NCBI GenBank assembly: GCA_976226885.1
Contig: OZ320318.1
Location: forward strand, 83,142,001-83,206,000
Reading direction: 5' to 3'
DNA from: Iphione sp. A-MEVVRFRX5
Lineage: Eukaryota
DNA length: 64,000 nucleotides
In this document: positions 36,135 through 61,957 of the stretch, in pieces
Position numbering within the stretch: position 1 is the first letter of the stretch
Layout: each line of letters begins with the position of its first letter
Program-made: the position numbers and the translations under genes
The notes under the pieces: generated by a model
What the model saw: the letters and a program-made list of their open reading frames with translations, nothing else
Database searches by the model: none
Told to the model about the DNA's origin: nothing

Positions 36135-38268
36135 GGTGGATCTCTCCGAAAAATACTGATCAACTGTAGTAGTAGTAGTAGTAGGGGGCCGGTAATTCCA
36201 AACACGGTATAAGCAAAGTACTGAGCTCTACTCAGTGACAAACACACACACAAAACTACTTGTCTCTACGAAGCCTCCCTCAGGTTTCCGAAAAGCCGAT
36301 ATAGTGTAGGGCAGGTCCTTTAAATTATCGAACAATCTCGTCCCCAGGGTAAGGTTTCCAAGTAAGGTGAAACAGGGCGAACAGAGGGTGAAATCTTAAA
36401 GCGTGCCCGGTGTCCTCTGCTCTGGTTGTGGCTCTTTCTAAGACCATTTGTTACTTGGCAGTCTTTTCGGCGGCCTTCGACTGGCTGTCCCCATAAACAG
36501 CTTTATCCTTGGCTGTCCTCCAGGTATACGGATGATGCCTCGGACGGCTTCGACAGGCCGCCATTCCCAACGCCTGCAACTTTCTGGTTCGGGACGACGG
36601 CAGGAAATGTTCCAGCAGGGCTAGGTCGATCTCGAAGAGGGTATATAAGGACGGCTAGAGGGGTGTCAGTCTGCGTCCGTCGAATTTTACTGCATCTACA
36701 CAAAAGAAAAGATAGATACTGTGTGAGATTTTAATAAGTGAATCTCTCTTGTTTTGCATAGTATATATATATATACTCGTATTACTTCGACACTCTAACA
36801 GATGACATTTGCATGAGATTCCAGTGAAGGGAAAGTGGGGACAGGCATGCAAGGAAAGCGAGCAATTGGAAAAGGCAAGAAGGCACAAAAACAATATTTG
36901 TGTAATACAGATTTGCATTTACAAAGATGAAGACACATATCTATTTATATTTCAGGCACACAAACGCATACATATAATTATATTAAACAACCCAACCCTA
37001 CCCCGCCTAAAGCTACAATCCACCCAACACACACTGCCACGAACATGGGGATGTATCTTAGGCCTAGACACATAAATAAAACGTTATTTACATACACGTT
37101 ATGAAAATTATTTCCTTCTTTGCCCCGAGATGAAATGGGGAACTGACAATAAATCGTCCGGTGAAACCTTTCATCATTTAGTATCAAACACACACAAATA
37201 TATATATACATATATCCACATCCTTCACTTTAGTAATATTCATAGTTCCTCCACTTCGACTGCATGTATATTTTTGTGTAATCTGTGATGGTGAATATCA
37301 GAGATATCAAAGTGTTAACTTTGACCAAGAAACGGCTCTTAATCACCAAATCTATAAATTAGGATGGTTATCTGTACAGGTATACATTGCCTCTTTATAG
37401 TGATATCTCTTTTGGGCAAAATGCACCGTCATTCAAGCCTGTGTATACTTTACCCCACACTTCTGGCAGAGGTGGAAAGTGGCAGTTCTGCTCCATTTCT
37501 TCGCCACTCCCGTTAAGGCCAAGAAACAGCCAGCACTAACTTAATGTATCCTACCGTGTATAGTTAAGGAGGCCCACACCCAAAATGATAAATGACATTA
37601 TCTCTATGGATAAAAACATTCTAGCAATCCTTTATAAAAAAAAATACGGTGCTGTAAAGAATCCGAATCTGGTCATCTTTCCGGAGAAATCTGAGGCCAA
37701 AAGTCTCATGTTCAGCTTTTGTTACTCCGATACCATTAGGATCGATATTTTTACATCTACATGTAAAGTTAAACGTCTCTAATCAGGACACCTTTGGTTC
37801 TTTCCCAAACTGTTCCCACTTGAGACATGTCCCTGTTAGATACTATTTTTATATGCGTATTCGTAATACGATCTGTTCTTCCTAAAATACCCCTTTTTAG
37901 AAGCACATCCCTATTGGAGATGTGTCGCTAATGTGGGGGCTTTGCACTGTAGCATCCCTCCATCATTTGAATGATTATATACCATAAGGAACGTTCCTAT
38001 TTCAAAGACACATAAAACCTAAAAAAGACTCCCACCATTATGCGTAAGCCTTCTATTATAATCCATGCTACTTTTGAGTGACTATGGGTGCAGTATCATG
38101 ATAATAAAGGATTTCGCACCTATTGAGGGCAAAGGATATAAGGGTTAGAAAGAAATGTGAAGTCGTAACTGTGTACAGAGTGTATTCGAAGTCAGTGTGA
38201 TAATATAGGATGTTTGTGATGCCGTAGAGAAGATGGGCCGGTGTTTTATGATGACGGAGGGAGTGGTT

Positions 38269-38796: not shown

Positions 38797-38869
38797 ACCT
38801 AGATAGCTCAATTGGGAGAGCGTCAGACTGAAGTTCTGAAGGTTCACGGTTCGAACCCGTGTCTAGGTA
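38797..38869 (+). tRNA. tRNA-Phe(GAA) gene inside the Polinton
   Basis: 73-nt cloverleaf with all stems paired: ACCTAGA/TCTAGGT, GCTC/GAGC, TCAGA/TCTGA (loop CT-GAA-GT), CACGG/CCGTG (loop TTCGAAC). A and B boxes intact; T4 run 7 nt downstream. Confidence 0.9.
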
Positions 38870-39037
38870 TATTCATTTTATTGGAAGTAAATTTGTTTCT
38901 AGCTATTGTGTAATATCGTTTCTCCTATGTCCAGACTATAAAAGTCATACAATTGTGTCAGATTTAGCACATTCGTTTCACAGAGGTTGGAGAGAAAAGC
39001 AGTTTTTTCTTCATCTTCACGATTTTATTCATTTACA

Positions 39038-39580
39038 ATGTCTGAGGAGAGAGATTATTCCGCTGTCGATGGATCTATTCAAGCTGATTCATGTATTGAG
39101 TCCGATTCCGGGTGTATTGAGACTGATTCCGGGTGTATTGAGACTGATTCCGGGTTTGTACCGAGCGGTAACAGACCTTTTGCTTGTTCGTTGGAAAGGA
39201 ACACAGCAACCATTCGACCATTGTATGTTAATCCGAAATCACGTTGCAATGTACCAGCATTTCCCAAGTTCAAAGATAAAGAGGTTCGCCGTCAGACGTT
39301 CGCAGGATGGAGCGGTTTGATTGACATAGAAGAACTGGTTCAGAGTGGTTTCTTCTATATAGGAGTAGGAACTGTACAATGCTTTCATTGCGGACTTTGT
39401 CTTCATTCCTGGGAGTCTTCGGATACTCCACACATTGAACATTTGAAGTTTGCACCAGAATGTGCTTTTAATTCTTCATTATCTAAACCGACGCGTCAAA
39501 GAGAATTCTTTGTTACTGTGCTACGTGATATAATCAAAGTTGCTAAGAGTGTTAAAGAACTAAAGGATTCTTTTGTTTGA
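39038..39580 (+). CDS. BIR-domain inhibitor of apoptosis-like protein (single BIR, no RING), ~180 aa
   Basis: RRQTFAGW...LVQSGFFYIGVGTVQCFHCGLCLHSWESSDTPHIEHLKFAPEC carries the BIR CxxC-H-C zinc ligands. ATG at 39038 preferred over the upstream TTG. Confidence 0.9.
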   Translation: MSEERDYSAVDGSIQADSCIESDSGCIETDSGCIETDSGFVPSGNRPFACSLERNTATIRPLYVNPKSRCNVPAFPKFKDKEVRRQTFAGWSGLIDIEELVQSGFFYIGVGTVQCFHCGLCLHSWESSDTPHIEHLKFAPECAFNSSLSKPTRQREFFVTVLRDIIKVAKSVKELKDSFV

Positions 39581-43875: not shown

Positions 43876-46800
43876 TCAGTTAATGAAAAAAACAATTACC
43901 TGCAATTTGCGGAATCGTTTAGGTGTCGGTGGTGGCGCCATTGCTGTGTCAGCTGAAGCATCTGATGAGTGACTTGTCTTCGACATGCTTGCTAAGCGTC
44001 TTGAGCGTCTTGGAGTAGAAGGGGGCGTGGCACGACTTGAAATGCTCACATCTGAATCACTGTCAAACCCCGTTGCTCGTTGGGACTTGACAGACAAGCG
44101 TCTTGAGCGTCTTGGAGTAGAAGGGGGTGTGGTTCGTTGTGAAATGCTCACATCTGAATCACTGTCAAACCCCGTTGCTCGTTGGGACTTGACAGACAAG
44201 CGTCTTGAGCGTCTTGGAGTAGAAGGGGGTGTGGTTCGTTGTGAAATGCTCACATCTGAATCACTGTCAAACCCCGTTGCTCGTTGGGTCTTGACAGACA
44301 AGCGGCTTGAGCGTCTTGGAGTAGAAGGGGGTGTGGTTCGTTGTGAAATGTTCACATCTGAATCAGTCTCAAACCCCGTTGCATGTTGGGTCTTGTCAGA
44401 CAAGCGGCTTGAGCGTCTTGGAGTAGAAGGGGGTGTGGTTCGTTGTGAAATGTTCACATCTGGATCAGACTCAATCCCTGTTTGCCGTATTTCTGAAGAG
44501 CATGCTAACTGACTCATGTCTTTGTTACTAGTTTTTTCTGTTGTTTGTTTTGAAGTTTTCAAGTACTTTTCTACCACTGTCGAGTCAAGTCTGACAACTG
44601 GGTTTATTGTTTTGACGAATTTTTCCATTAATTTTCCATCTAGAAGTTTCAGAGGAAGTTTGACAATGATTTCTGGTTGCTTGCTGAGTGATGCAAAAGG
44701 GATGTTGCTTGAAGATGGAACCACTTCTGTTGACGAGAGATTGGGAGTAGGTTTGAAACACACACTTCTTGGAATTGCTTCAACTGTGTTTGAACCTGTG
44801 ACAAATGGTTTCTTTTGTGTCAGGGAAGCCTCATCTCTCGGTGGGGTGGTAGTGGAGGTGGTAGATGAAACTGTTTCCACATCTGTTGTTGATTCAATGC
44901 TACTAGAACTGGAACAAACACTTCCTGGAATTGGAACATTTGAGTTAGTGCTTGTGGAAAACGGTTTTCTAGTTGTCAGACAAGATGGGGTGGCTGAAGA
45001 AGCTNNNNNNNNNNNNNNNNNNNNNNNNNNNNNNNNNNNNNNNNNNNNNNNNNNNNNNNNNNNNNNNNNNNNNNNNNNNNNNNNNNNNNNNNNNNNNNNN
45101 NNNNNNNNNNNNNNNNNNNNNNNNNNNNNNNNCTCTGTCGGGGTGGTGGTGGTGGAGGTGGTGATAGGTGTTGAAGAGTCATCTTTTGTTGGGGTGATGG
45201 GGATAGTTGAGTCACGTGCAAAAGGATTAGTAGGCGACAGTGTTGAAGAAGAAGAAGACACATCTCTCGTTGGGCTGCTCGATAAACCAGCTACTGCATA
45301 TGCTGATGAGACATGAGCAAAAGGATTAGTAGGCGACAGCGTTGAAGAAGTCACATCTCTCGTCGGGGTAGTCGTTAAACCCACTAATGCATATGTTGAT
45401 GAGTCATGGCTAAAAGGATTAGTAGGTGACAGCATTGAAGAAACCACACCTCTCGTTGGGCTGACCGATAAAACAGCTACTGCATATGCTGACGAGTCAT
45501 GAACAAAAGGATTAGTAGGCGACAGCGTTGAAGAATTCACATCTATCGACGGACTGCTTGTTAAAACTGCTTCTCCATCTGCTGACGAGTCATGGGTTGG
45601 AGAGGAAACAGTGCAGAGACTAGCTGCTACTGCATCTGCTGTCTGTTCATTGCCAGATGGGTTGGGACAAACATCATTGTTAATGAATGAAGCAAAAGGG
45701 TTATTGCTGGAGAACACTGGCTCATTCTGTTGTCTTTCTGGTTGAACAGACTTCAGGCTGCTGATGTTTACAGGTGAAAATGATCTTTCCAATGCTGATG
45801 AATGTGTAGGTATATGAGTGAGTGAACATTCTGTTGGAGAATGACTGGGAGACGTGTTCTGCATGTTCTTTGGGAGAACATCCTTCAGACTTCTACTGGA
45901 AAAACATGATAGGTGAGAAGAAGAAGAGTGTGATGCTGTTTGAGATTGTTGTGGAGGAGTAGGTGATCGTGGTGATGGTGGTGGAGGTGGTGGACTCGTT
46001 CGCTCTGGTGATGGAGGTGGTGTTCGAGGTGATGGAGGGGGTGGTGGTGGACTCGTTCGCTCTGGTGGTGGTGGTGAACGGAGTGATAGTGGTGGATTCG
46101 TTCGCTCTGCTGGTGCTGGTGAAGAACGTGCTGGACCAGGTGAACGCTGTGGTGGTGGGATAGATTGCTCTGCTGGTGCTGGTGAAGAACGTGCTGGACC
46201 AGGTGAACGCTGCGGGAAAGGTGAACGTGGTGGTGGACTCGTTCGCTCTGGTGGAGGTGGTGATCGTGGTGATGGAGGGGGAGGTGGTGGACTCGTTCGC
46301 TCTGGTGAAGAACGTGCTGGTCCAGGTGAACGCTGTGGGAAAGGTGATCGTGGTGGTGGTGAAGAACGTGCTGGAGCAGGTGAACGCTGTGGGAAAGGTG
46401 ATCGTGGTGGTGGTGAAGAACGTGCTGGACCAGGTGAACGCTGTGGGAAAGGTGATCGTGGTGGTGGTGAAGAACGTGCTGGAGCAGGTGAACGCTGTGG
46501 GAAAGGTGATCGTGGTGGTGGTGAACGCTGTGGGAAAGGTGATCGTGGTGGCGGTGAAGAACGTGCTGGGTCAGGTGAACTTGGTGGTGTTGGTGAATGA
46601 AGGTGTACTGGATATGGAGATGTGGGGACTGGAAGCGTTGAACGTGGTCGTGCTGTCGATGATGATGATGAGGTGCCTGGAAGTGGTGAACGTGGACGAG
46701 GTGTCAATGATGATGGGGATCCTGGAAGTGTTGAACTTGGACGTGGAGACAATGATGAGGGTCCTAGAAGCGATGGTCGTGAACGTGGTGTCAATGATGA

Positions 46801-47272
46801 TGAGGGTCCTGGAAGCGATGATCGTGCTCGTGCTGACAATGATGATGAATGGGGTGGAAGAGGAGGTGGTGGAAAATGTGCTCGTGCTGGCAAGTTTGAT
46901 GTATGGGCTGGAAGAGGTGGAAGTGATGTTGAACGCGGGCGTGGTGTCAATGCTGAGTGGCCTGGAAGAGGAGGAGGTGGAAGAGATGCTGAACGTGGTG
47001 CTGGAGTTGGTCCCATACCTGATGTGGAAGGTTCCCCGTGCTGTGTTTTAGATAGAAACAGTTTTTTCAGAACATCAATTCCTGATAGACAACCACGTGT
47101 ATAATCTGGAGCTTGCCCAATGCTTCGATTTGTTGGTTTACTCTTCTGAGAAAATGTAGTATCTTGCCATAAATTGGGTGTTTCAGGGGGTTCCTCATCA
47201 TCCTCACTGTTTACTTCACCAAGCACTGCATCAGTTTGTCTGTTGTTAACTCTTGAAGGAACAGATCTATTT
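43876..47272 (-). CDS. Large Pro/Ser/Thr-rich repetitive coding exon (~1120 aa, spans a 128-N gap); probable cytoplasmic tail of the 47591-48216 membrane protein
   Basis: Stop-free frame with 54-bp, 93-bp and 102-bp coding repeats. Acceptor caaag|a at 47272 (phase 2); donor cag|gtaatt after 43900. Confidence 0.75.
45005..45132. other. Assembly gap (128 N)
   Basis: Run of N inside the repetitive large exon. Confidence 1.
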
Positions 47273-49644: not shown

Positions 49645-50127
49645 TCAATTTTTGAGACATCTTAACATTTCACTATTCACTACTCTAAAATCATTCTTTT
49701 CTAAATCTACGCTATCATAATGGTTAATATATTTTTTCAAAGACCATCCTTTAAGTTTGAAGAAAATATATTCCATACAAAAATGACCACACACTGGTTG
49801 TTTTCCTTGAATTTTCGTGTTTGAAAACAGGAATTTTGAAGCATTTACTATAAGGAAATCTTCAATTCTCTGACTGTAGGATTGGGGTGGTTTTCCTAAT
49901 GGATCGAAAAATTCAGCAGGTTCGTTATTTTCAGGGAGGAAAATGACTACCCAGTGTTTTCCTATCCCAGTAACCTGATCTGTATTCACAACATAGATAG
50001 CTGGTTTTTGCGAAACAGGAAAAGATGGTAGGTTCTGATATGAGTCCACAGCTTTGAAAATGCTTTCGTGAGCAAAACATTTCTTGAAATCAGTACTAGT
50101 TAATGGTTTAGGTGGTGAGTTGAACAT
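49645..50127 (-). CDS. Adenain-like cysteine maturation protease (PRO)
   Basis: VVNTD...GKHWV (His), EFFDPLG (Asp), IQ...VCGHFC (Gln, Cys) catalytic pattern. Confidence 0.93.
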   Translation of the reverse strand: MFNSPPKPLTSTDFKKCFAHESIFKAVDSYQNLPSFPVSQKPAIYVVNTDQVTGIGKHWVVIFLPENNEPAEFFDPLGKPPQSYSQRIEDFLIVNASKFLFSNTKIQGKQPVCGHFCMEYIFFKLKGWSLKKYINHYDSVDLEKNDFRVVNSEMLRCLKN

Positions 50128-52156: not shown

Positions 52157-53269
52157 TTATATACCTTCCTGTATGCGTTTCAGTTCCTCCTTACTGACCC
52201 AGGAATCATACTTACTGGGCCAACCGAGCCAGTGAACAATGAATCCGTCCTTTCCATTAAGCTTTTTTTTTCTGATAACTTTTTCTACTTTATATTGAGT
52301 ATCTTGGTTCACTTCCACCGGGATCATTTCTTCTGTATAGAATTTTCCATCTATTTCTTCATTGTCCCAAGACTTAAGTGAATATTGGGGAATACCTTGT
52401 TGCATTTTCCTGTCTGTAACCACAAACAATTCATGAGTCCAGTTTTCGTCATAAGCCCTTGTGAAGGTTTGTTTGAATTTAGATAACCTCACAACATCAC
52501 CCTTTTCAAACTTGAAAGGAAAAGTTTTGGGGATTTTCTTGTCTTTGGTAGTATCAAATTGAACGTTCCACAATTTGACTTTTTCACTCTCACTGGCTTG
52601 AAGGGGAGTCATTTTGATAGAACGATGAAAAGAATTATTGTATGAATCTGTGAAATGAGAAAGATTTTCCAACCACTTGTGACTTTGTAAGAAGTACATC
52701 TCTTTGGTGATCTTGGATTTTATTGTTTTTATGAAACGTTCAGCATAATTTGCTTTCACTTCGTTCCTCGTTACCACGTGCTTTATATTTTCTTTGTTCA
52801 GGTACTTCCTCACCCATTGATTATTGAATTCACTTCCTCCGTCAGTTCGTAGCACTTTACAAACTTGCTCTTGAAAGACAGATTTCAGTGCGCTCAATGT
52901 TTCTTTTCCCGAGAGAGTTTTGAGGGGACGAGTCCAAGCATACCTGGGAAAAACATCTATGACCACTAAGAAATAACTCATTCCATCGTTTTCTTTAGAC
53001 CATGTGACCATATTAGCAGTATCTGCATCGAATTGAAAGAATTTATCCGAAACCACCACCCTTGGTCGTTTCACAGAACGAGAAGGTTTTGAAGGGGCAA
53101 ATAACGTATATGTCTCCTGTGCTTTCAACCATTCTCGTATTTTCTTGAGAGAGATATTCTTGCCATCTTTCTTAGCTCTCGTATAAAGTGCTGTCACACC
53201 AGAAAAAGCTTCGGGTTCATTGGGGTCATAATAAATCTTGTTTAAGTACTCTTCCATCCATCGTGCCAT
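52157..53269 (-). CDS. Retroviral-type DDE integrase with C-terminal chromodomain
   Basis: FQFDADT (D), LRTDGGSEF (D), YAERFIKTIK (E); chromodomain YKVEKVI...FIVHWLGWPSKYDSWV. Consistent with the 6-bp TSD. Confidence 0.96.
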   Translation of the reverse strand: MARWMEEYLNKIYYDPNEPEAFSGVTALYTRAKKDGKNISLKKIREWLKAQETYTLFAPSKPSRSVKRPRVVVSDKFFQFDADTANMVTWSKENDGMSYFLVVIDVFPRYAWTRPLKTLSGKETLSALKSVFQEQVCKVLRTDGGSEFNNQWVRKYLNKENIKHVVTRNEVKANYAERFIKTIKSKITKEMYFLQSHKWLENLSHFTDSYNNSFHRSIKMTPLQASESEKVKLWNVQFDTTKDKKIPKTFPFKFEKGDVVRLSKFKQTFTRAYDENWTHELFVVTDRKMQQGIPQYSLKSWDNEEIDGKFYTEEMIPVEVNQDTQYKVEKVIRKKKLNGKDGFIVHWLGWPSKYDSWVSKEELKRIQEGI

Positions 53270-53628: not shown

Positions 53629-53960
53629 TCTCTCATCAGTTTAAATAGATCTGGTTTGATTGAAAGAAGAATGCGATATAGCTGAGTACGTTGATGTGCA
53701 ATCAGTTTAGCTTTCTTTTTCAATGAGGAAGTGGGATCACTAAGATTCTTGATGAGTCTTATATTCTTGTCAACGACTCTTCTGACTGGTTGAGGGATAG
53801 GGAGATTGTTTAAATTAAAAGCAATCTCGCTCAAGACTAATGCCTGGTCTGGGGTTACAGTGTACAAGAGTGCTTCTGCTTGGTTCTTGTTTGGAGTGTT
53901 CAGAAGAAGAGTGAGAAAGTCTTTCTGGTTGTTGATCCGTGGACTCTTCATTTGTACCAA
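53625..53960 (-). CDS. Small Polinton hypothetical protein
   Basis: 111-aa ORF (FLTLLL...AEALL...DQALVLSEIAFN) directly downstream of the ATPase, with overlapping start/stop. Confidence 0.75.
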   Translation of the reverse strand: MVQMKSPRINNQKDFLTLLLNTPNKNQAEALLYTVTPDQALVLSEIAFNLNNLPIPQPVRRVVDKNIRLIKNLSDPTSSLKKKAKLIAHQRTQLYRILLSIKPDLFKLMRE

Positions 53961-54568
53961 ACTAGAACCTCGTCAGGGAAAATGTGAGAGGTTAACTTGA
54001 CTTCAGTGTGATTGCGTGGATGGAGGTCGACCACTAAATAACCGAATGGTTCGGAAGTGACGTCTTTATATGCTTCCTTTATGCTCGGCATTCCGACTTG
54101 TTGTGCCAGACGTGTTATCTGTTGAATATCCCTTGGATTTTTAAACAGCACTAAGTATTGAGAATTGAGAGCAATTGTCCTGGCACATTTTCCTTGACAA
54201 TATAAATTCTGATTCATATAAATAATAGTAATATCCCTATGGTGAGATCCTCTAGTAAACAAATGCTGAATTTCCGAATCGTTCACTACAATATCCATCA
54301 AGTCGTCTAGTATCAAAAGAATTCTTCCACCTTCTTTCAAATCCTCCAAATTGATTCCCTCGCGGAATTCAACATCTTTAACATCTTGAAATCCAGTTTG
54401 CCAAGCACCATAACAATATACGATTTTTTTGAAAGGTTTTTCAAACAGTTGTTTTCTATATCGGATGAGTTTCTTCACGAAATATGTCTTACCAGAAGAG
54501 GTGGCTCCAGAAATGGATATGGTGCTTGGTGTAGCGAAGCTGAACGATGGTATGTCTAGTTCAGTCAT
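53948..54568 (-). CDS. A32/FtsK-like DNA packaging ATPase
   Basis: Walker A GATSSGKT, Walker B LLILDD, FTRGSHHRDITIIYMNQNLY, FKNPRD. TATAAAA about 40 bp upstream of ATG 54568. Confidence 0.95.
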   Translation of the reverse strand: MTELDIPSFSFATPSTISISGATSSGKTYFVKKLIRYRKQLFEKPFKKIVYCYGAWQTGFQDVKDVEFREGINLEDLKEGGRILLILDDLMDIVVNDSEIQHLFTRGSHHRDITIIYMNQNLYCQGKCARTIALNSQYLVLFKNPRDIQQITRLAQQVGMPSIKEAYKDVTSEPFGYLVVDLHPRNHTEVKLTSHIFPDEVLVWYK

Positions 54569-54661
54569 TGTGAGAACACAATATGTCAAGACAAAATACA
54601 AACTTATGGTTTTATATTGCAGTGCAATGAAATAATAACTGAAACAAATTAGTTTTTTTTT

Positions 54662-57600
54662 TCATTTATTCAACTCCATGCGTACTCTCACCTCTTCCCA
54701 TAACTCCCCGAGTTTATTCTTTCCTTTGAATTCACATGGTCGAGAAATTTTCACATTTCCAACATCCATACCTACACCCCAAAACCTGTCTAGACTAGCA
54801 TATACAATCTTTTTACAATGAGAGAGTTCTTTCCTCACTTCAGGGAAAGTTCTAGCTATATACAACATGAGATCCCTCATGATTTTGAGATTAACCTCTT
54901 CGAGATTCTCACTAGGTTTTATGAAAGAAAGTAATGACTTCATTTCTTTTGGATCAGAAGAAGAATGAATTAATCGAGCCACTTCGGTTGCACGGTGAAA
55001 CACGGCGAGGTTATAATAAAACATGTGAAACAAAGATTGAAAACCAGCAAGTTGCCATCTGTAAAAGGGATTCAAGACTTCCCAGGGTTTAGCAATTATA
55101 AAATAATCATCAACATTCCATGGGGATAATGTGATCTGAAGAGGTGAGGTGTTGATTCCATCATCATGAACGATTCTCTTTACATAGAAGTAAGAAAATC
55201 CCACTCGTTCCTGCCTATATGTAAAAATTGTTCCGTCTCGAGCTCGGAAACCAGAATTGGTACCTGATTTAGGAATCTGTGTTTCCAGAACTGAAGAATA
55301 CAACGCTAAGGGTTCTGTCACCTTAGATTTTGAAATTCCTTTACAACTGAATTTTGACACACCCTTGTTATCTAAAACATAAGTCTTACTGGTCAGTGCT
55401 ATGATGGAATCGCCTCTCGCCTCCTCTTTCATGATCCCTGGAACTCTTCTGTCAAATGAATGATGTCTGTCACAACACTGACGCATGAACCAAATCGGAG
55501 AGAGCTTATCATCACATCTATCCCTGATCTCACTGACATACTCCATCTTCTTATCAACAAAGATGTTGTCTTCAAAGTTTTCGTATGCAAAAGCAATATA
55601 AGCACTGTCGGTATCCATAGTTACGTATTGAAAATGATTTCTAGGAATAAGTCTGTCTATACAATCATAATAGAAAGATAACATAGTTAATTTAGCATAT
55701 TGTAAAATGGTGAAACCGATATAAATAGGCATATCGAGAACAATACGGGGTTTAACAGATTCTACCTCAAAAAGACCATTTAATTCATTTACTTTTCTGA
55801 AACGGGGAGAATTAATTGCATTGATCGTTTCAGTGGGATCTGAAAAATATTTTACATTCATTTGCTTTTCTTTTTGCATGATAACTCCCCCATAAGCAGA
55901 ATTCCCTATGAGCTTCATGGTGTCAGCAATCACTGCACTATCAGGATCAGAGTCACCCTGTCTTCTTGCACTTGTTACATCTTCTGTAAATTTCTTGAAA
56001 CAATCTTTGGGAACGAATTCAATCATCTGGTAAATTTTTGTAACCAGCAAACCATGTTCCATATACCATTTTAGAAGAGGAGAAGCTATGAGGATCTTTT
56101 TAGCAGACAAAGCACTGACCAGAAGCTCTCTCGGATTTCGTGATAGATTATGTTCTTCAACATGTTTCTGCATGTGGGGACCAAAATGATTGAATTCGAC
56201 ACTTGCCTTTCCAAATAAAGGACACATTTCTGAGAAATATTCCTTTGGTGGGAGTTCCCTCTCCATTCCTTCAGGCCAAACATTGGGAACTGAAATATCC
56301 ACTTCCAGAGCACCAAACAGACTTCCATCAGAAACCCCCTTTAAAATATCCTTAGTCGTGACCTTTCCAGGATGCTTGCGAGTGAACTCAGGATAAAATA
56401 AATTCACCCAGTCTTGAAGCTCTGTTGAATTTTGAATCATTTCCCTGAAGTAGCACTCGTTCATACTAATTACTTCATAACCATTTTTTTCAAAAAAATG
56501 CTTTCTCTTTTTTGTTCGTTCCTCATTTTTCTTTCGGATATTTTCTTTCATTTTTCCCTTCATACAAATATGACCATGAAAATAACACCCATCGAACTCG
56601 AAAATCTGTTTGGAACTCTGTGAATGACTATAACCATCGACCCTATAAGGACCCACTCTGACTTCACCCTCAGCTCTGTTCTGAAAATGAGAGATATGAA
56701 TCCCACGCTTTTCAGATTCCCACTCCAACCAGATATACATCAATTGGTAAACAGAATGACGAACAGGTTTGAAACCAGTCTCTTCATGCCTTCTGACAAA
56801 ATTTCCAGTCGGCATTGCATTTCCAATTGCAGATAAATAGAGACTGTTTGCATCAAAGCCAATAATTGTTTGACATTTGTGTGGACCAGATCTGATGAAA
56901 GTTTCATTAGCAATATGCTTTCGAGTAAATACTATTGCTGGACCACCTACTAAATTCCTCTTATAAGTTTGATATAAATCTTCCTCAGAATTATTGAATA
57001 AAGGGAAATGTGTGTTACTCTCTGAAGCTGACTGGAAAAGCATTCTACGTGCTATCCCTGGAGCAGAGACTGAAATCTTGAATATATCTATTTCTCTTTG
57101 AAAATAGAAATCTTGTAAACGAACAACAGCTGTAACAAAAGGTCCAACATCCAGATTATTATAATAGGCTAAAAAATCCCTCAGCGTTTCCATCCCTTCC
57201 CTTTCCCATATACACAATAATTGTTCGTATTCCTCTCGGGAAATATTTGAGTTCCTAAAAGATGAATAAAAAGCATCATGTGGAGGAAGAGAGCGATCAT
57301 TTAACTTTTCTGGGCAGTCCAAATATTCATAACAAAAGAAGGATTTCTGCTCTGGTACTCCATATGCCTTCAGAAATTTCGAATAGGATACCCCTGGACT
57401 CAAATACTGACATATGTCAAGAAATTTGAATTGATCATTGGATATACAGATATAAGAATTCTCTCGTTTAATGACAAAGGTTTCCTTTCCCACCAGATCC
57501 AAATGGTTTAAGAGTTGCTTTCTGAGAAGATTTAGGTCATATCTCGCCGAATTGAATCCTAAAACTGGAAGACAAGAAATGTAAGCCAGTAGACGCTTTT

Positions 57601-59470
57601 CCAAACTTCCAATCAATTTCAACATTTCTAAACTCTCATGTTCTTTCCTTTCAGAGTCCACGTCATCACCAGCCGTGTCTCCATCATCGATCACACCACC
57701 AATCCCCACGTCACATTCATGAATTGGATAACAGTCAACCCAAGAGGAATCTTCTTCTGTCATCATCACCTCCTCCACCACCTCCTCCTCCACCTGCACT
57801 TCACGTTCGATTCCCGCATGCTTAAGTTCTTCCAAAAGATCCTTTCTCATTTCCTTTAAAGCACTCAATGCAAAAGCCCATTTCTCTTTACCCTTCTTTA
57901 GAGTCTCCTCTTGAATTCTCTTTAGATAATCCACCATTTCCTCAACAAGAGCAGACATGTCCTCATTGATAAAGCAACGTGGAGTTGAGAAATTTTCCAC
58001 ATTACTACAGACAGAAACTGAAATCGTCTCGTGTTTGTTAATCCAGTGTAATTTAGAACAATTTCCAGGATCTGTGGCACGAAGCATTGCCTCGCAATCG
58101 AACACTGCAAAATCACGAAAAAGTCGATCCTCTCGTGGAACATGAATCCCAACACTTTCCAATTCTTCAAAAATTGTGGAAGGATTACTATAGAAACCCC
58201 CTTTGTAGTGATACGTTGTTTTAAGAGGACAGGTTCTCATGTGTCTGAGAAAATGGTGCTTCTTTTTTAAACAGAAACCACACATTGAACACTCAAATTT
58301 CTGAGCATACCTTGGAAAATCTGAAACATACGAGAGATGACCATGGTACACATTTAAGTACATTGTGTCAGTGAAACAAGTGAATGGTTTATGTTTGAGT
58401 TTCACTGAATCATTAACAGTCATTTCATAAATGTATATACTCGTCTCGAAACATCTCTCGAACTCTCCTACAAGTTTCATATCAAGACCAGCAAACTCAA
58501 AAGGATCAGAGGGAATAGATAGTTTGAGTTTTCTGTTGCAATACTGATTCCATTGTTCATAATATACAGTAACTGCAGCCTCGATATCTGCTTGTTGATT
58601 GTGAACGGCCAAACACCTAAATGCACAAAGCGAGTCTGTGATCTGTGTGGAATCATCGTGACGGTCAAGTGAAATGAGAAATGGTTTCCTTTTTAAAAAT
58701 TCAGGCAAGAAACCGTATCCTAAAGTAAAAGACGTTTTCGAAATGAAATAAGTCACATTTGTAATCATGACTGCTTTCCATTTGGTGTCTGGTCGATTCA
58801 CAGTAAAATAACCCTCTGGATCAAAAGCACTAAGCCTCTCCAAGATTCGGGGTATGTCTGACCTTCTTGAAATAATGACAGGATCTGAAAATACTGTACT
58901 GTTCCGATACGGAACAAAGTACCTGTACTCTCCACTCTCCACATGTCTTAAGATAACTCCAAACCCGAGATTCAGTTTGATTCGTGAGTCTTCGAGATGG
59001 AAAATCTCGTTTAGTTGGCTAGTAAATTCATTCACACCATCTGAAAGATTATTGGTAGGGAAATTAAAAGTACTCGAAACCTGACCCGACCTGTGATTTG
59101 CAAGAATATGTCCACGATTAGCTTCATACACTCTTCTCAGGGGTTCATCAACAACCGAACCATGTTCATCAAGCCATGGTGCAGCATTGTGCTGCCATGG
59201 TTCTTCCTGAAGTGTATCACCACTTCCATGCTGAATGCCATTGTGCATATACAAATCTTTTTTGGAATTAAAGACCTCAGAACATTTCCTACACCTATAA
59301 GATTTTCTTTTGCTGTGATATGACATGTGATGGTTTAATTGCTGAACAGTTCTAAAGCGCCTATTACATTGCATACATGTTAGGTTTTTCTTCTGCTGAC
59401 ACTTGGGAATATGGTTCTTTGCATTCTTCTCACGAACGAAGGATCTGGAGCATATGGGACATATGTGTCT
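54662..59470 (-). CDS. Protein-primed family B DNA polymerase (pPolB), main exon: zinc fingers, terminal-protein region, vOTU-like protease, exonuclease, polymerase with Vsr-like insertion, C-terminal NADAR-like domain
   Basis: ExoI FDCE, ExoII FNSARYD, ExoIII YNNLD; Pol DANSLY, KLIGNSAYG, MDTDS. Frame stays open upstream of ATG 59374 to acceptor ttttttctag| at 59470. AATAAA overlaps the stop codon. Confidence 0.97.
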   Translation of the reverse strand, partial: RHICPICSRSFVREKNAKNHIPKCQQKKNLTCMQCNRRFRTVQQLNHHMSYHSKRKSYRCRKCSEVFNSKKDLYMHNGIQHGSGDTLQEEPWQHNAAPWLDEHGSVVDEPLRRVYEANRGHILANHRSGQVSSTFNFPTNNLSDGVNEFTSQLNEIFHLEDSRIKLNLGFGVILRHVESGEYRYFVPYRNSTVFSDPVIISRRSDIPRILERLSAFDPEGYFTVNRPDTKWKAVMITNVTYFISKTSFTLGYGFLPEFLKRKPFLISLDRHDDSTQITDSLCAFRCLAVHNQQADIEAAVTVYYEQWNQYCNRKLKLSIPSDPFEFAGLDMKLVGEFERCFETSIYIYEMTVNDSVKLKHKPFTCFTDTMYLNVYHGHLSYVSDFPRYAQKFECSMCGFCLKKKHHFLRHMRTCPLKTTYHYKGGFYSNPSTIFEELESVGIHVPREDRLFRDFAVFDCEAMLRATDPGNCSKLHWINKHETISVSVCSNVENFSTPRCFINEDMSALVEEMVDYLKRIQEETLKKGKEKWAFALSALKEMRKDLLEELKHAGIEREVQVEEEVVEEVMMTEEDSSWVDCYPIHECDVGIGGVIDDGDTAGDDVDSERKEHESLEMLKLIGSLEKRLLAYISCLPVLGFNSARYDLNLLRKQLLNHLDLVGKETFVIKRENSYICISNDQFKFLDICQYLSPGVSYSKFLKAYGVPEQKSFFCYEYLDCPEKLNDRSLPPHDAFYSSFRNSNISREEYEQLLCIWEREGMETLRDFLAYYNNLDVGPFVTAVVRLQDFYFQREIDIFKISVSAPGIARRMLFQSASESNTHFPLFNNSEEDLYQTYKRNLVGGPAIVFTRKHIANETFIRSGPHKCQTIIGFDANSLYLSAIGNAMPTGNFVRRHEETGFKPVRHSVYQLMYIWLEWESEKRGIHISHFQNRAEGEVRVGPYRVDGYSHSQSSKQIFEFDGCYFHGHICMKGKMKENIRKKNEERTKKRKHFFEKNGYEVISMNECYFREMIQNSTELQDWVNLFYPEFTRKHPGKVTTKDILKGVSDGSLFGALEVDISVPNVWPEGMERELPPKEYFSEMCPLFGKASVEFNHFGPHMQKHVEEHNLSRNPRELLVSALSAKKILIASPLLKWYMEHGLLVTKIYQMIEFVPKDCFKKFTEDVTSARRQGDSDPDSAVIADTMKLIGNSAYGGVIMQKEKQMNVKYFSDPTETINAINSPRFRKVNELNGLFEVESVKPRIVLDMPIYIGFTILQYAKLTMLSFYYDCIDRLIPRNHFQYVTMDTDSAYIAFAYENFEDNIFVDKKMEYVSEIRDRCDDKLSPIWFMRQCCDRHHSFDRRVPGIMKEEARGDSIIALTSKTYVLDNKGVSKFSCKGISKSKVTEPLALYSSVLETQIPKSGTNSGFRARDGTIFTYRQERVGFSYFYVKRIVHDDGINTSPLQITLSPWNVDDYFIIAKPWEVLNPFYRWQLAGFQSLFHMFYYNLAVFHRATEVARLIHSSSDPKEMKSLLSFIKPSENLEEVNLKIMRDLMLYIARTFPEVRKELSHCKKIVYASLDRFWGVGMDVGNVKISRPCEFKGKNKLGELWEEVRVRMELNK

Positions 59471-61046: not shown

Positions 61047-61118
61047 TTCCCAGACTCGGATTTGAACCGAGGACATACGGATATTCCGTCCGACGCTCTC
61101 CCACTGAGCTACCTGGGA
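61047..61118 (-). tRNA. tRNA-Phe(GAA)-like Pol III gene with a non-canonical anticodon loop
   Basis: 72 nt: TCCCAGG/TCTGGGA, GCTC/GAGC, TCGGA/TCCGT (one mismatch, loop CG-GAA-TA), CTCGG/CCGAG (loop TTCAAAT). A and B boxes intact; T6 terminator 4 nt downstream. Confidence 0.78.
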
Positions 61119-61431: not shown

Positions 61432-61505
61432 CTGTGACGTCACAGAGGTCACGGCTCAGCCAATCAGGAGAAACTTTTCGCGACCCCTTACCCCACTATA
61501 CTACT
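61432..61505 (-). repeat. Right terminal inverted repeat (74 bp)
   Basis: Exact reverse complement of 38269-38342. Confidence 0.97.
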
Positions 61506-61807
61506 GTGGTTGGAGTTTTGGGTGTGGCTTCCGGGTCATGTCTGCCAAGGCACGAACGAATCTGCTTAACAACGAAAAAGGACCCTTGTCATCTTAGAGT
61601 CAGTGTCCTCGCGCTGACCATTTTTATTATGAAAAGGTAGCCCCCAAAATGCTTGGTGGATCTCTGTTTAACGCTCAAGCGGTTATGCGGAGTATATAAT
61701 ATGAGACACGCCTAATCTCAAGCATATATTTCTGTCGTGTTTGTACATCTGAGGATTTCGTCCAAGGTATCTTAGATGTTCATGCGGTCAAGCCTCATTA
61801 ATTGAAT

Positions 61808-61957
61808 NNNNNNNNNNNNNNNNNNNNNNNNNNNNNNNNNNNNNNNNNNNNNNNNNNNNNNNNNNNNNNNNNNNNNNNNNNNNNNNNNNNNNNNNNNNNN
61901 NNNNNNNNNNNNNNNNNNNNNNNNNNNNNNNNNNNNNNNNNNNNNNNNNNNNNNNNN
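61808..61957. other. Assembly gap (150 N)
   Basis: Run of N in the host flank. Confidence 1.

What the first reader, a model, noticed from the sequence alone, without database searches (positions are those of the whole stretch)
54662..55105. NADAR (YbiA/DUF1768)-like domain fused to the C-terminus of the protein-primed DNA polymerase
Seen: after the polymerase ends (~SPLQITLSPW) the frame continues ~150 aa: LNPFY...FQSLFHMF...SSSDPKEMK...KIMRDLM...PEVRKEL...KIVYASLDRFWGVG...FKGKNKLGELWEEVR. This aligns in order with YbiA-type FSNF...TSEHYF...SSP..A...VMR.AL...ELR.LL...KLVE...D.YWG.G...KGKNRLG.LLMELR. Established: NADARs hydrolyse N-glycosidic ADP-ribose links, including removing ADP-ribose from DNA guanine (antitoxin of DarT1); pierisins and the clam enzyme CARP-1 ADP-ribosylate guanine in DNA. 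Inference: a replisome-tethered eraser or reader that protects viral DNA from host DNA ADP-ribosylation, suggesting an unrecognised animal defence/counter-defence pair. Caveat: the Asp of DxxWG is kept, but the conserved Glu/Lys of the SEHY..AQK motif and the Glu of VE are replaced, so the domain may bind rather than hydrolyse. I do not recall this fusion being described.
Basis: partly seen in the sequence, partly recalled or inferred. Interest (0 to 1): 0.9.

Follow-up and report, generated by a model that had tools for sequence, protein, structure and literature searches.

The report
NADAR-like domain on a Polinton polymerase
The DNA polymerase of an apparently intact, virus-like Polinton/Maverick element ends in a real NADAR (ADP-ribose glycosidase) fold shared by a whole clade of such polymerases, but this copy lacks nearly all residues known NADARs use to bind and cut ADP-ribose, so it is probably not an enzyme.

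Summary
The finding lies on the minus strand, at the end of one uninterrupted 1570-aa ORF (54662-59374). Its last ~150 aa match Pfam NADAR above the curated cut-off. They fold into the NADAR architecture (pLDDT 93), and the only significant PDB matches are YbiA and the Phytophthora NADAR. The rest of the protein is a protein-primed family-B polymerase; its best structural match is phi29 polymerase. The gene sits in a 23.2-kb Polinton with perfect 74-nt terminal inverted repeats and a 6-bp target-site duplication.

The fusion is not unique. All 36 NADAR-derived tails among 118 related polymerases fall on one side of a single tree split. Domain divergence tracks polymerase divergence (r = 0.92). 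Another lineage carries DUF4326, also ADP-ribose-linked, at the same C-terminal position.

The active site is decayed. The Glu/Lys/Glu set is complete in 39 of 48 stand-alone NADARs but in only 4 of 56 fused ones. This copy has Phe, Leu and Tyr there and has also lost other ADP-ribose contacts.

The best reading is a non-catalytic NADAR derivative descended from an active counter-defence enzyme. I found no paper describing the fusion. Interest is moderate.

The parts
54662..59374 (-). [quoted passage not shown]
   Evidence: 914 homologues were found. Relatives 43-48% identical to the window protein hit PF03175 above its cut-off. The Exo I-III, A, B, C and KxY motif residues are invariant in alignment A2. 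An AF2 model of aa 420-1570 has pLDDT 85.9 and pTM 0.83. Its top nine Foldseek PDB matches are phi29 DNA polymerase (best E 1.9e-11, TM 0.67 normalised to the target).
54674..55114 (-). NADAR-like C-terminal domain, about aa 1421-1567 (the Pfam-matched core is aa 1441-1566, window 54677-55054)
   Evidence: PF08719 48.8 bits against cut-off 35.1. Canonical-only HMM 88 bits. AF2 pLDDT 93.3, pTM 0.84. The only significant PDB fold matches are 2b3w (YbiA) and 8bau (NADAR with ADP-ribose). The same helices appear in a second model whose alignment holds no stand-alone NADAR. The catalytic positions are Phe, Leu and Tyr.
55139..58117 (-). Exonuclease and polymerase core, about aa 420-1412. The last family-conserved polymerase residues lie about 8 aa before the NADAR-like domain starts.
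   Evidence: Invariant columns in A2 and A3; model and phi29 matches.
56420..56692 (-). Inserted endonuclease-like module inside the polymerase, roughly aa 895-985 (approximate bounds)
   Evidence: Invariant D913, G914, G929, H933 and C937. JGI names two relatives 'very short patch repair endonuclease'. No Pfam hit in the window itself. Homing-endonuclease insertions in polinton pPolBs are reported in PMC11161782.
58175..59374 (-). N-terminal region, about aa 1-400: weak C2H2 zinc-finger matches and a Cys/His-bearing region. The position fits the published TP-vOTU part of polinton polymerases, but I did not model it.
   Evidence: Sub-threshold zinc-finger hits. The A2 profile's zinc-finger positions match many PDB zinc-finger chains. 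Invariant C250, C254 and H346. Published architecture in PMC11161782.
38269..38342 (.). Left terminal inverted repeat, preceded by the 6-bp target-site duplication GTGGTT (38263-38268)
   Evidence: 74 nt, 100% complementary to the right arm; flanks read directly.
61432..61505 (.). Right terminal inverted repeat, followed by GTGGTT (61506-61511)
52157..53269 (-). Retroviral-type (rve) integrase with a C-terminal chromodomain
   Evidence: PF00665 34.2 bits (cut-off 32.6) and PF00385 32.0 bits (cut-off 25.1).
53948..54601 (-). Probable packaging ATPase (A32-like / P-loop), directly downstream of the polymerase gene
   Evidence: Weak, sub-threshold hits only: Pox_A32 17.4 bits and AAA_14 17.2 bits; PHROG terminase large subunit E 1.4e-3.
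49645..50127 (-). Probable adenain/Ulp1-type cysteine protease
   Evidence: Sub-threshold hits to Peptidase_C5 (17.3 bits) and Peptidase_C48 (14.9 bits).

Best explanation
The last ~150 residues of this Polinton polymerase are a genuine NADAR-fold domain. It was acquired once by an ancestor of one polymerase clade and has been inherited together with the polymerase. In this copy the positions used for known NADAR chemistry, and most ADP-ribose contacts, are replaced. The two ribose-coordinating Glu are Phe and Tyr. The phosphate/adenine Lys is Leu. The Gly-Arg pair, the pyrophosphate Trp and an Arg are Leu-Ser, Leu and Asn. The domain is therefore most likely not a hydrolase. It is a non-catalytic derivative kept attached to the end of the polymerase (no stop, about 8 residues of linker, no Gly-Gly cleavage-type site) for a structural or binding role. 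Shown here: domain identity, fold, fusion, clade-wide inheritance, and the loss of catalytic and contact residues. Inferred: that the ancestral domain was an active ADP-ribose N-glycosidase serving counter-defence, and that the present domain still has a selected role that is not catalytic.
For: Identity and fold.

Fusion to a polymerase whose motifs are all intact.

Inheritance: all 36 NADAR-derived tails lie on one side of one split of the polymerase tree. Pairwise identity is 29% in the domain against 47% in the polymerase core, with r = 0.92 across 105 pairs.

Active-site decay, stand-alone NADARs (n=48) against fused ones (n=56): Glu 92% vs 34%; Lys 83% vs 45%; Glu125-equivalent 90% vs 5%. 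All three are present in 39/48 vs 4/56, and none of the three in 0/48 vs 21/56. The 56 fused sequences show 41 different residue combinations at these three positions.

Fold-marking positions stay conserved in the fused set: Trp 93%, and the Gly/Asn/Gly of the GxNxLG motif 95%, 89% and 82%. A sister group keeps only the C-terminal ~44 recognisable columns of the domain.

The roles of these residues are taken from the ADP-ribose co-crystal and mutagenesis in PMC11543638.
Against: A few fused relatives keep the complete canonical residue set (P0123, P0145, P0140), so activity is not excluded for the family as a whole. In E. coli C7 NADAR the catalytic acid sits at a non-aligned position (D171 rather than E173), so a shifted catalytic residue is possible in principle. 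However, I found no Asp or Glu within several positions of that site in the window. Asp130 and Trp133 equivalents, and a basic surface (pI 9.3), are retained. No binding or activity data exist. The window copy also deviates at two positions that are 93% and 84% conserved in the fused family, which could mean decay rather than a retained role.
Confidence: 0.5

Rival explanations
1. One reading: the domain no longer cuts but still binds ADP-ribose, an NAD-derived nucleotide, or ADP-ribosylated DNA. It would either target the polymerase to such sites or regulate it.
For: The Asp130 and Trp133 equivalents and the GxNxLG motif are kept in the window. In the fused family the pyrophosphate-contacting Trp89 equivalent is 93% conserved, while the ribose-coordinating Glu residues are lost. 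A second domain predicted to process ADP-ribose, DUF4326, occupies the same position in another polymerase lineage.
Against: In this copy the Lys50, Gly78, Arg79, Trp89 and Arg93 equivalents, which hold the adenine and pyrophosphate in 8bau, are all replaced. No family-specific conserved pocket emerged; the only gain is one Trp near the C-terminus (71% in fused sequences against 12% in stand-alone ones).
Confidence: 0.2
2. Decaying relic: the domain was useful once, is now dispensable, and survives only because it is attached to an essential gene.
For: The domain evolves faster than the polymerase core (29% against 47% identity). Nine members on the domain-bearing side of the tree split lack it. 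A sister group has a reduced version. The residues at the active-site positions are highly variable. The window deviates even at otherwise conserved Trp and Lys positions.
Against: At 35-55% polymerase identity, a neutral 150-aa tail would be unrecognisable or cut by stops. Instead, more than 50 diverged sequences keep full length and the fold-marking residues. The window still scores above Pfam's cut-off and models at pLDDT 93.
Confidence: 0.17
3. Active eraser: a polymerase-tethered hydrolase that removes ADP-ribose from bases in the element's DNA.
For: NADARs reverse guanine and cytidine ADP-ribosylation (PMC11543638, PMC12945103). Some fused relatives keep the full catalytic set. CARP-1-type DNA ADP-ribosyltransferases are reported mainly in bivalves, and the named polymerase relatives are mostly molluscan.
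Against: The window lacks equivalents of E88, K95 and D171/E173, each required in E. coli C7 NADAR. No DarG-type model matches it in PADLOC. No ADP-ribosyltransferase or second NADAR was seen in the window.
Confidence: 0.08

Closest known systems
YbiA-type NADAR hydrolases (E. coli YbiA, PDB 2b3w; Phytophthora nicotianae NADAR with ADP-ribose, PDB 8bau; DarT1-associated NADAR antitoxins)
   Same: Same Pfam family and fold. The DxxWG and GxNxLG motifs are kept.
   Different: Those are stand-alone enzymes with a Glu/Lys/acid set. This domain is fused to a DNA polymerase, has Phe, Leu and Tyr at those positions, and has lost most ADP-ribose contacts. No partner toxin gene is present.
NADAR domains embedded in replicase polyproteins of invertebrate RNA viruses (nido-like viruses, yellow head and gill-associated viruses), and NADAR proteins of giant viruses and phages
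   Same: A NADAR fold encoded with the replication machinery of viruses of invertebrates. These are structural matches in BFVD and are described in PMC9503650.
   Different: Those are RNA-virus polyproteins or stand-alone proteins. No BFVD match is a polinton or adintovirus polymerase.
NADAR domains in retrotransposon proteins (Ectocarpus Gypsy Pol; Crassostrea gigas Tx1 LINE ORF1)
   Same: A NADAR captured by a mobile element and fused to its replication or structural protein, including in a bivalve (PMC12477816).
   Different: Those are retroelements, with N-terminal or ORF1 placement. This one is a DNA element with the domain at the C-terminus of a DNA polymerase.
Polinton/Maverick pPolB architecture (TP-vOTU-Exo-Palm with homing-endonuclease insertions)
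   Same: Protein-primed polymerase with N-terminal extras and an inserted endonuclease-like module, inside an element with TIRs, a 6-bp TSD and an rve integrase.
   Different: The published architecture (PMC11161782) lists no C-terminal NADAR or DUF4326 module.
Caenorhabditis elegans SNA-3, NADAR domain 1
   Same: An animal NADAR domain in which the residues critical for YbiA activity are not conserved (PMC9303266). It is a precedent for non-canonical NADAR use.
   Different: A cellular trans-splicing factor with three NADAR domains. It is unrelated in context, and I did not compare it by sequence here.

Membership tests
NADAR superfamily (PF08719) | Profile match above the curated threshold | tested here: met
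   48.8 bits (domain alone) and 43.5 bits (whole protein) against cut-off 35.1. Below the cut-off of the narrower TIGR02464 model (37.8 against 73.7).
NADAR superfamily (PF08719) | [quoted passage not shown] | tested here: met
   AF2 pLDDT 93.3. Foldseek finds only 2b3w and 8bau at E<=1e-3, with TM 0.66-0.70. The same secondary structure appears in a model whose alignment holds only polymerase relatives.
YbiA-type catalytically competent NADAR | Glu coordinating the distal ribose (E43 in P. nicotianae, E88 in E. coli C7, E48 in YbiA) | tested here: not met
   Phe in the window. Glu in 92% of stand-alone and 34% of fused sequences.
YbiA-type catalytically competent NADAR | Lys seven residues after that Glu (K50/K95), contacting adenine and phosphate | tested here: not met
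   Leu in the window. Lys in 83% of stand-alone and 45% of fused sequences.
YbiA-type catalytically competent NADAR | Subfamily-defining residue at the E125 position (Glu in YbiA type, Asp in BC4488 type, His in phage type) | tested here: not met
   Tyr in the window. In fused sequences it is Tyr 46%, Phe 12% and Glu 5%. The window has no Asp or Glu at neighbouring positions.
YbiA-type catalytically competent NADAR | Asp and Trp of the DxxWG motif (D130, W133) | tested here: met
   Both are kept in the window.
YbiA-type catalytically competent NADAR | N-glycosidase or ADP-ribosyl-base hydrolase activity | not testable with these tools
   No biochemical data are available.
DarT1-associated NADAR antitoxin (DarG1) | E88, K95, D171 and K115 equivalents together with a neighbouring DarT1-type toxin gene | tested here: not met
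   Only the K115 equivalent is present. No DarG model matches in PADLOC. No ART domain was found among the element's ORFs.
[quoted passage not shown] | Exo I-III and Pol A, B, C and KxY motifs, and a phi29-like fold | tested here: met
   Motif residues are invariant in A2. The top nine PDB fold matches are phi29 polymerase. PF03175 hits relatives but not the window sequence itself.
Polinton/Maverick element | pPolB plus rve integrase between terminal inverted repeats, with a 6-bp target-site duplication | tested here: met
Polinton/Maverick element | Packaging ATPase, maturation protease, and double and single jelly-roll capsid proteins | tested here: inconclusive
   The ATPase and protease give only sub-threshold hits. 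No capsid protein was identified by Pfam or PHROGs, and no ORF was modelled for this.

The most novel reading that the evidence does not exclude
The C-terminus of polymerases in a clade of marine-invertebrate Polintons is a slot for ADP-ribose-processing modules: NADAR in one lineage and DUF4326 in another. These would have been acquired to clear or sense base ADP-ribosylation laid on replicating viral DNA by host CARP-1/pierisin-type enzymes. That would be an animal counterpart of the bacterial DarT1-NADAR phage conflict, with many copies, including this one, having since lost catalysis.
Probability: 0.15. Interest if true: 0.85.

Novelty: new variant of a known kind. Interest (0 to 1): 0.55.

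Why it matters
NADAR hydrolases are the only known erasers of guanine and cytidine ADP-ribosylation in nucleic acids. So far that role is tied to bacterial toxin-antitoxin and phage conflicts. Finding a NADAR physically fused to the replicative polymerase of a eukaryotic DNA virus-like element is therefore notable. It is inherited across a clade, and another lineage has a different ADP-ribose-linked domain at the same spot. Together these suggest that DNA ADP-ribosylation may matter in virus-host conflict in marine invertebrates, where DNA-targeting ADP-ribosyltransferases such as CARP-1 exist. The fused family also shows stepwise active-site loss inside a conserved fold, which makes it a natural series for studying how an enzyme domain becomes a pseudoenzyme. 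For this particular copy the practical message is caution: the Pfam label 'NADAR' should not be read as 'ADP-ribose hydrolase'.

Tried and rejected
- Word-indexed homology searches restricted to the C-terminal region and to the domain alone returned nothing. This reflects the 5-residue word filter, not absence. The exhaustive search and the polymerase-anchored search did find relatives.
- Single-sequence phmmer against PDB found no NADAR and no polymerase. A profile and fold searches were needed.
- Pfam DNA_pol_B_2 does not hit the window protein or its closest relatives P0001 and P0004, even at E<=10. Membership rests on motifs, more distant relatives and fold.
- The full-length profile against PDB was swamped by C2H2 zinc-finger chains and gave no information on the polymerase.
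- A DNA-binding shift in charge was tested and rejected. Median pI is 8.6 in both fused and stand-alone domains (p = 0.66).
- Membership of the DarG-type antitoxin family was considered and rejected.
- A shifted catalytic acid, as in E. coli C7 NADAR, was looked for and not found.
- Flank ORFs gave no Pfam hits, so the host could not be identified from the window.
- Process note: the profile files and one hhalign output in my scratch folder contain consensus annotation written by those programs themselves. I printed and used none of it. I also used none of the consensus lines that the alignment tool prints.
Full report
**1. What is there**

The finding's coordinates lie on the minus strand. 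They are the 3' end of one uninterrupted ORF, window 54662-59374, coding for 1570 aa.

Pfam NADAR (PF08719) matches aa 1441-1566. The score is 43.5 bits for the whole protein and 48.8 bits (E 1.2e-12) for the last 167 aa alone, against a curated cut-off of 35.1. The narrower NCBIfam model TIGR02464 matches below its own cut-off.

A profile I built only from 22 stand-alone NADAR proteins scores 88 bits on aa 1440-1567. These proteins came from the exhaustive search, and no fused sequence was included. A six-frame scan finds no other NADAR-like stretch in the window.

**2. Fold**

I modelled the last 167 aa with AlphaFold2 using alignment A1, which holds the window's C-terminus plus 33 short hits. 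The model has mean pLDDT 93.3 and pTM 0.84.

- Foldseek against the PDB gives two significant matches: E. coli YbiA (2b3w; E 8.4e-5, TM 0.66) and Phytophthora nicotianae NADAR bound to ADP-ribose (8bau; E 8.2e-4, TM 0.70). Nothing else is below E = 2.
- A profile of A1 finds the same two PDB entries by sequence (E 1e-34 and 3e-28).
- Against predicted viral structures, all 21 matches at E<=1e-3 that carry a name are NADAR/YbiA-type proteins of phages and giant viruses, and the unnamed ones include long multi-domain chains. Replicase polyproteins of invertebrate RNA viruses follow just below that threshold. None is a polinton or adintovirus polymerase.

A1 contains canonical NADARs, which could bias the fold. 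As a control I modelled aa 420-1570 with an alignment holding only polymerase relatives (A3). The C-terminal region shows the same helices and strands at the same residues, with pLDDT 82-93.

**3. The protein it is fused to, and the element**

Pfam's DNA_pol_B_2 model does not hit the window protein. The evidence that it is a protein-primed polymerase is as follows.

- The polymerase part (aa 400-1400) has 914 homologues.
- Relatives 43-48% identical over the whole polymerase part do hit PF03175 above threshold.
- The Exo I, II, III and polymerase A, B, C and KxY motif residues are invariant in a 21-sequence alignment that includes the window.
- The 1151-aa model (pLDDT 85.9, pTM 0.83) has phi29 DNA polymerase as its nine best PDB matches (best E 1.9e-11, TM 0.67 normalised to the target). 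phi29 is the only solved protein-primed family-B polymerase. Other family-B polymerases follow.

The gene lies in a 23,237-bp element spanning 38269-61505. The element has perfect 74-nt terminal inverted repeats and is flanked on both sides by the same 6 bp, GTGGTT. It also encodes an rve integrase with a chromodomain. It has weak, sub-threshold matches to an A32-like ATPase and an adenain/Ulp1-type protease. This is a Polinton/Maverick. No capsid protein was identified with the libraries at hand.

I saw no stop or frameshift in the polymerase gene. One other long ORF runs across a run of N, which I left as it is.

**4. Is the fusion unique?**

It is not. Among the 120 best polymerase relatives, 13 carry a precomputed PF08719 hit, including the four closest (46-53% identical over their full length).

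I mapped the end of the polymerase in 117 relatives:

- 75 have fewer than 50 further residues after that point.
- About 36 have a tail of 125-210 aa.

Apart from P0006 (see below), all the long tails are homologous to the window's tail by iterated profile search. They fall into two size classes:

- A long class of 16 sequences in the tree set, counting the window, which the canonical NADAR profile recognises over at least 100 positions.
- A short class of about 140 aa (20 sequences). Profile-profile comparison recognises only its last ~44 columns as NADAR (95% probability).

The exhaustive search with the domain alone adds many C-terminal gene fragments with the polymerase end directly upstream. 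This gives 56 fused domains in all, counting the window.

On a neighbour-joining tree of the polymerase core (118 sequences, 797 columns), all 36 NADAR-derived tails lie on one side of a single split, together with 9 tail-less sequences.

Among 15 full-length members, mean pairwise identity is 47% in the core and 29% in the domain. The two values are correlated across pairs (r = 0.92). This fits one acquisition followed by joint inheritance, with the domain evolving faster but clearly not neutrally. At this depth a neutral tail would not still pass Pfam's threshold or keep its length in more than 50 diverged sequences.

**5. A second domain at the same slot**

P0006 is a relative on the other side of that split, 43-44% identical to the window protein. 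It ends in DUF4326 instead (PF14216, 70.6 bits). [quoted passage not shown] Two unrelated ADP-ribose-linked domains at the same position in different polymerase lineages is the strongest circumstantial support here for a link between these polymerases and ADP-ribose biology.

**6. The active site**

Schuller et al. list the ADP-ribose contacts of the Phytophthora enzyme: E43, K50, G78, R79, V81, Y84, D86, W89, R93, E125, D130, W133, with K75 near the site but not touching the ligand. They show that E88, K95 and D171 of E. coli C7 NADAR are needed for guanine de-ADP-ribosylation (PMC11543638).

I anchored the alignment on the conserved Phe, Ser, Tyr and Ala around the first motif. The window compares as follows:

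| Position (P. nicotianae numbering) | Window residue |
|---|---|
| E43 | Phe |
| K50 | Leu |
| K75 | Lys (kept) |
| G78-R79 | Leu-Ser |
| W89 | Leu |
| R93 | Asn |
| E125 | Tyr |
| D130 | Asp (kept) |
| W133 | Trp (kept) |

The window has no Asp or Glu within several positions of the E125 site that could substitute, as D171 does in E. coli C7.

Across the family, stand-alone NADARs (n=48) and fused ones (n=56) compare as follows:

| Feature | Stand-alone | Fused |
|---|---|---|
| Glu (E43 position) | 92% | 34% |
| Lys (K50 position) | 83% | 45% |
| Glu (E125 position) | 90% | 5% (Tyr 46%, Phe 12%) |
| All three present | 39 of 48 | 4 of 56 |
| None of the three | 0 of 48 | 21 of 56 |

The 56 fused domains show 41 different combinations at these three positions. 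By contrast, fold-marking positions stay conserved in the fused set: Trp 93%, Lys 84%, and the Gly/Asn/Gly of the GxNxLG motif 95%, 89% and 82%.

Three fused fragments (P0123, P0145, P0140) keep the complete canonical set and a fourth (P0180) has His at the third position, so some members may still be enzymes.

The window copy is at the decayed end of the range. It also departs at the Trp and Lys positions that nearly all fused relatives keep. PADLOC gives only a weak match to a candidate-system NADAR model and none to DarG. Fused and stand-alone domains do not differ in charge.

**7. Interpretation**

The domain call and the fusion are right. The idea of an active polymerase-tethered eraser is unlikely for this copy, and a canonical ADP-ribose reader pocket is doubtful.

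The best-supported reading is a non-catalytic NADAR derivative that stays attached to the polymerase. About 8 residues separate the last conserved polymerase residues from the first strand of the domain, and there is no Gly-Gly type cleavage site. It probably descends from an active N-glycosidase acquired by an ancestor of this polymerase clade.

What the present domain does is not shown. A structural or binding role is inferred from retained length, retained fold residues and co-divergence with the polymerase. The rivals are a reader/sensor, a decaying relic and an active enzyme, in decreasing order of my confidence.

**8. Comparison with what is known**

- NADAR domains are already described in phages, giant viruses and the replicase polyproteins of invertebrate RNA viruses (PMC9503650).
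- They are also described in the Pol of an Ectocarpus Gypsy lineage and in ORF1 of oyster Tx1 LINEs (PMC12477816).
- Polinton polymerases are described as TP-vOTU-Exo-Palm proteins with homing-endonuclease insertions (PMC11161782).
- Searches combining NADAR, YbiA or DUF1768 with Polinton, Maverick, adintovirus or protein-primed found no paper describing this fusion. The adintovirus paper does not mention ADP-ribose.
- CARP-1 homologues, which ADP-ribosylate guanine in DNA, are reported mainly in Bivalvia (PMC12945103). The named polymerase relatives are mostly molluscan, with amphioxus and sea stars.

The hosts of the NADAR-bearing relatives, and of this window, remain unnamed.

**9. Verdict**

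This is a new domain architecture within known kinds: a Polinton polymerase and a virus-borne NADAR. It has a clear family-wide pattern of active-site loss. Interest is moderate (0.55). The conflict reading is possible but unproven (about 0.15).

Noticed in passing
window 38987-39580 (+): An ORF inside the element, near its left end, carries a BIR (inhibitor-of-apoptosis) domain (PF00653, 56.8 bits, E 3e-15). This is a likely host-manipulation gene carried by the Polinton.
   Followed up: no
window 38797-38869 (+) and 61047-61118 (-): Two tRNA-Phe(GAA) genes sit about 400-530 bp inside each end of the element, in inverted orientation. They are only ~72% complementary to each other, although the 74-nt terminal repeats are identical.
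   Followed up: partly
window about 56420-56692 (-), roughly aa 895-985 of the polymerase: An endonuclease-like module is inserted in the polymerase, with invariant Asp-Gly and Gly/His/Cys positions across relatives. JGI names two relatives 'very short patch repair endonuclease'. It has no Pfam hit in the window.
   Followed up: partly
window 57656-57802 (-), aa 525-573 of the polymerase: An acidic, predicted-disordered insertion lies in the exonuclease region (pLDDT below 50 over model residues 106-154).
   Followed up: no
window 59225-59374 (-) and about aa 360-381: C2H2 zinc fingers at the N-terminus of the polymerase give weak hits in the window. Relatives have arrays strong enough that a full-length profile hits dozens of zinc-finger structures in the PDB.
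   Followed up: partly
window 43876-47226 (-); N run 45005-45132: A 1116-codon open frame encodes highly repetitive Pro/Ser-rich sequence with tandem units and has no Pfam hit. It runs across a 128-base run of N, so its continuity is unknown. A second N run lies in the right flank at 61808-61957.
   Followed up: no
protein P0006 (relative found), residues 1489-1569: This relative has DUF4326 at the same C-terminal slot of a related polymerase, in a different tree lineage. DUF4326 is predicted in the literature to process ADP-ribose phosphates.
   Followed up: partly
proteins P0069, P0082, P0070 and 17 others: A sister group of polymerases carries a shorter tail of ~140 aa, in which only the last ~44 columns are still recognisable as NADAR. 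It looks like a reduced derivative of the same domain.
   Followed up: partly
window 52157-53269 (-): The integrase carries a C-terminal chromodomain (PF00385, 32 bits), which suggests chromatin-targeted integration.
   Followed up: no
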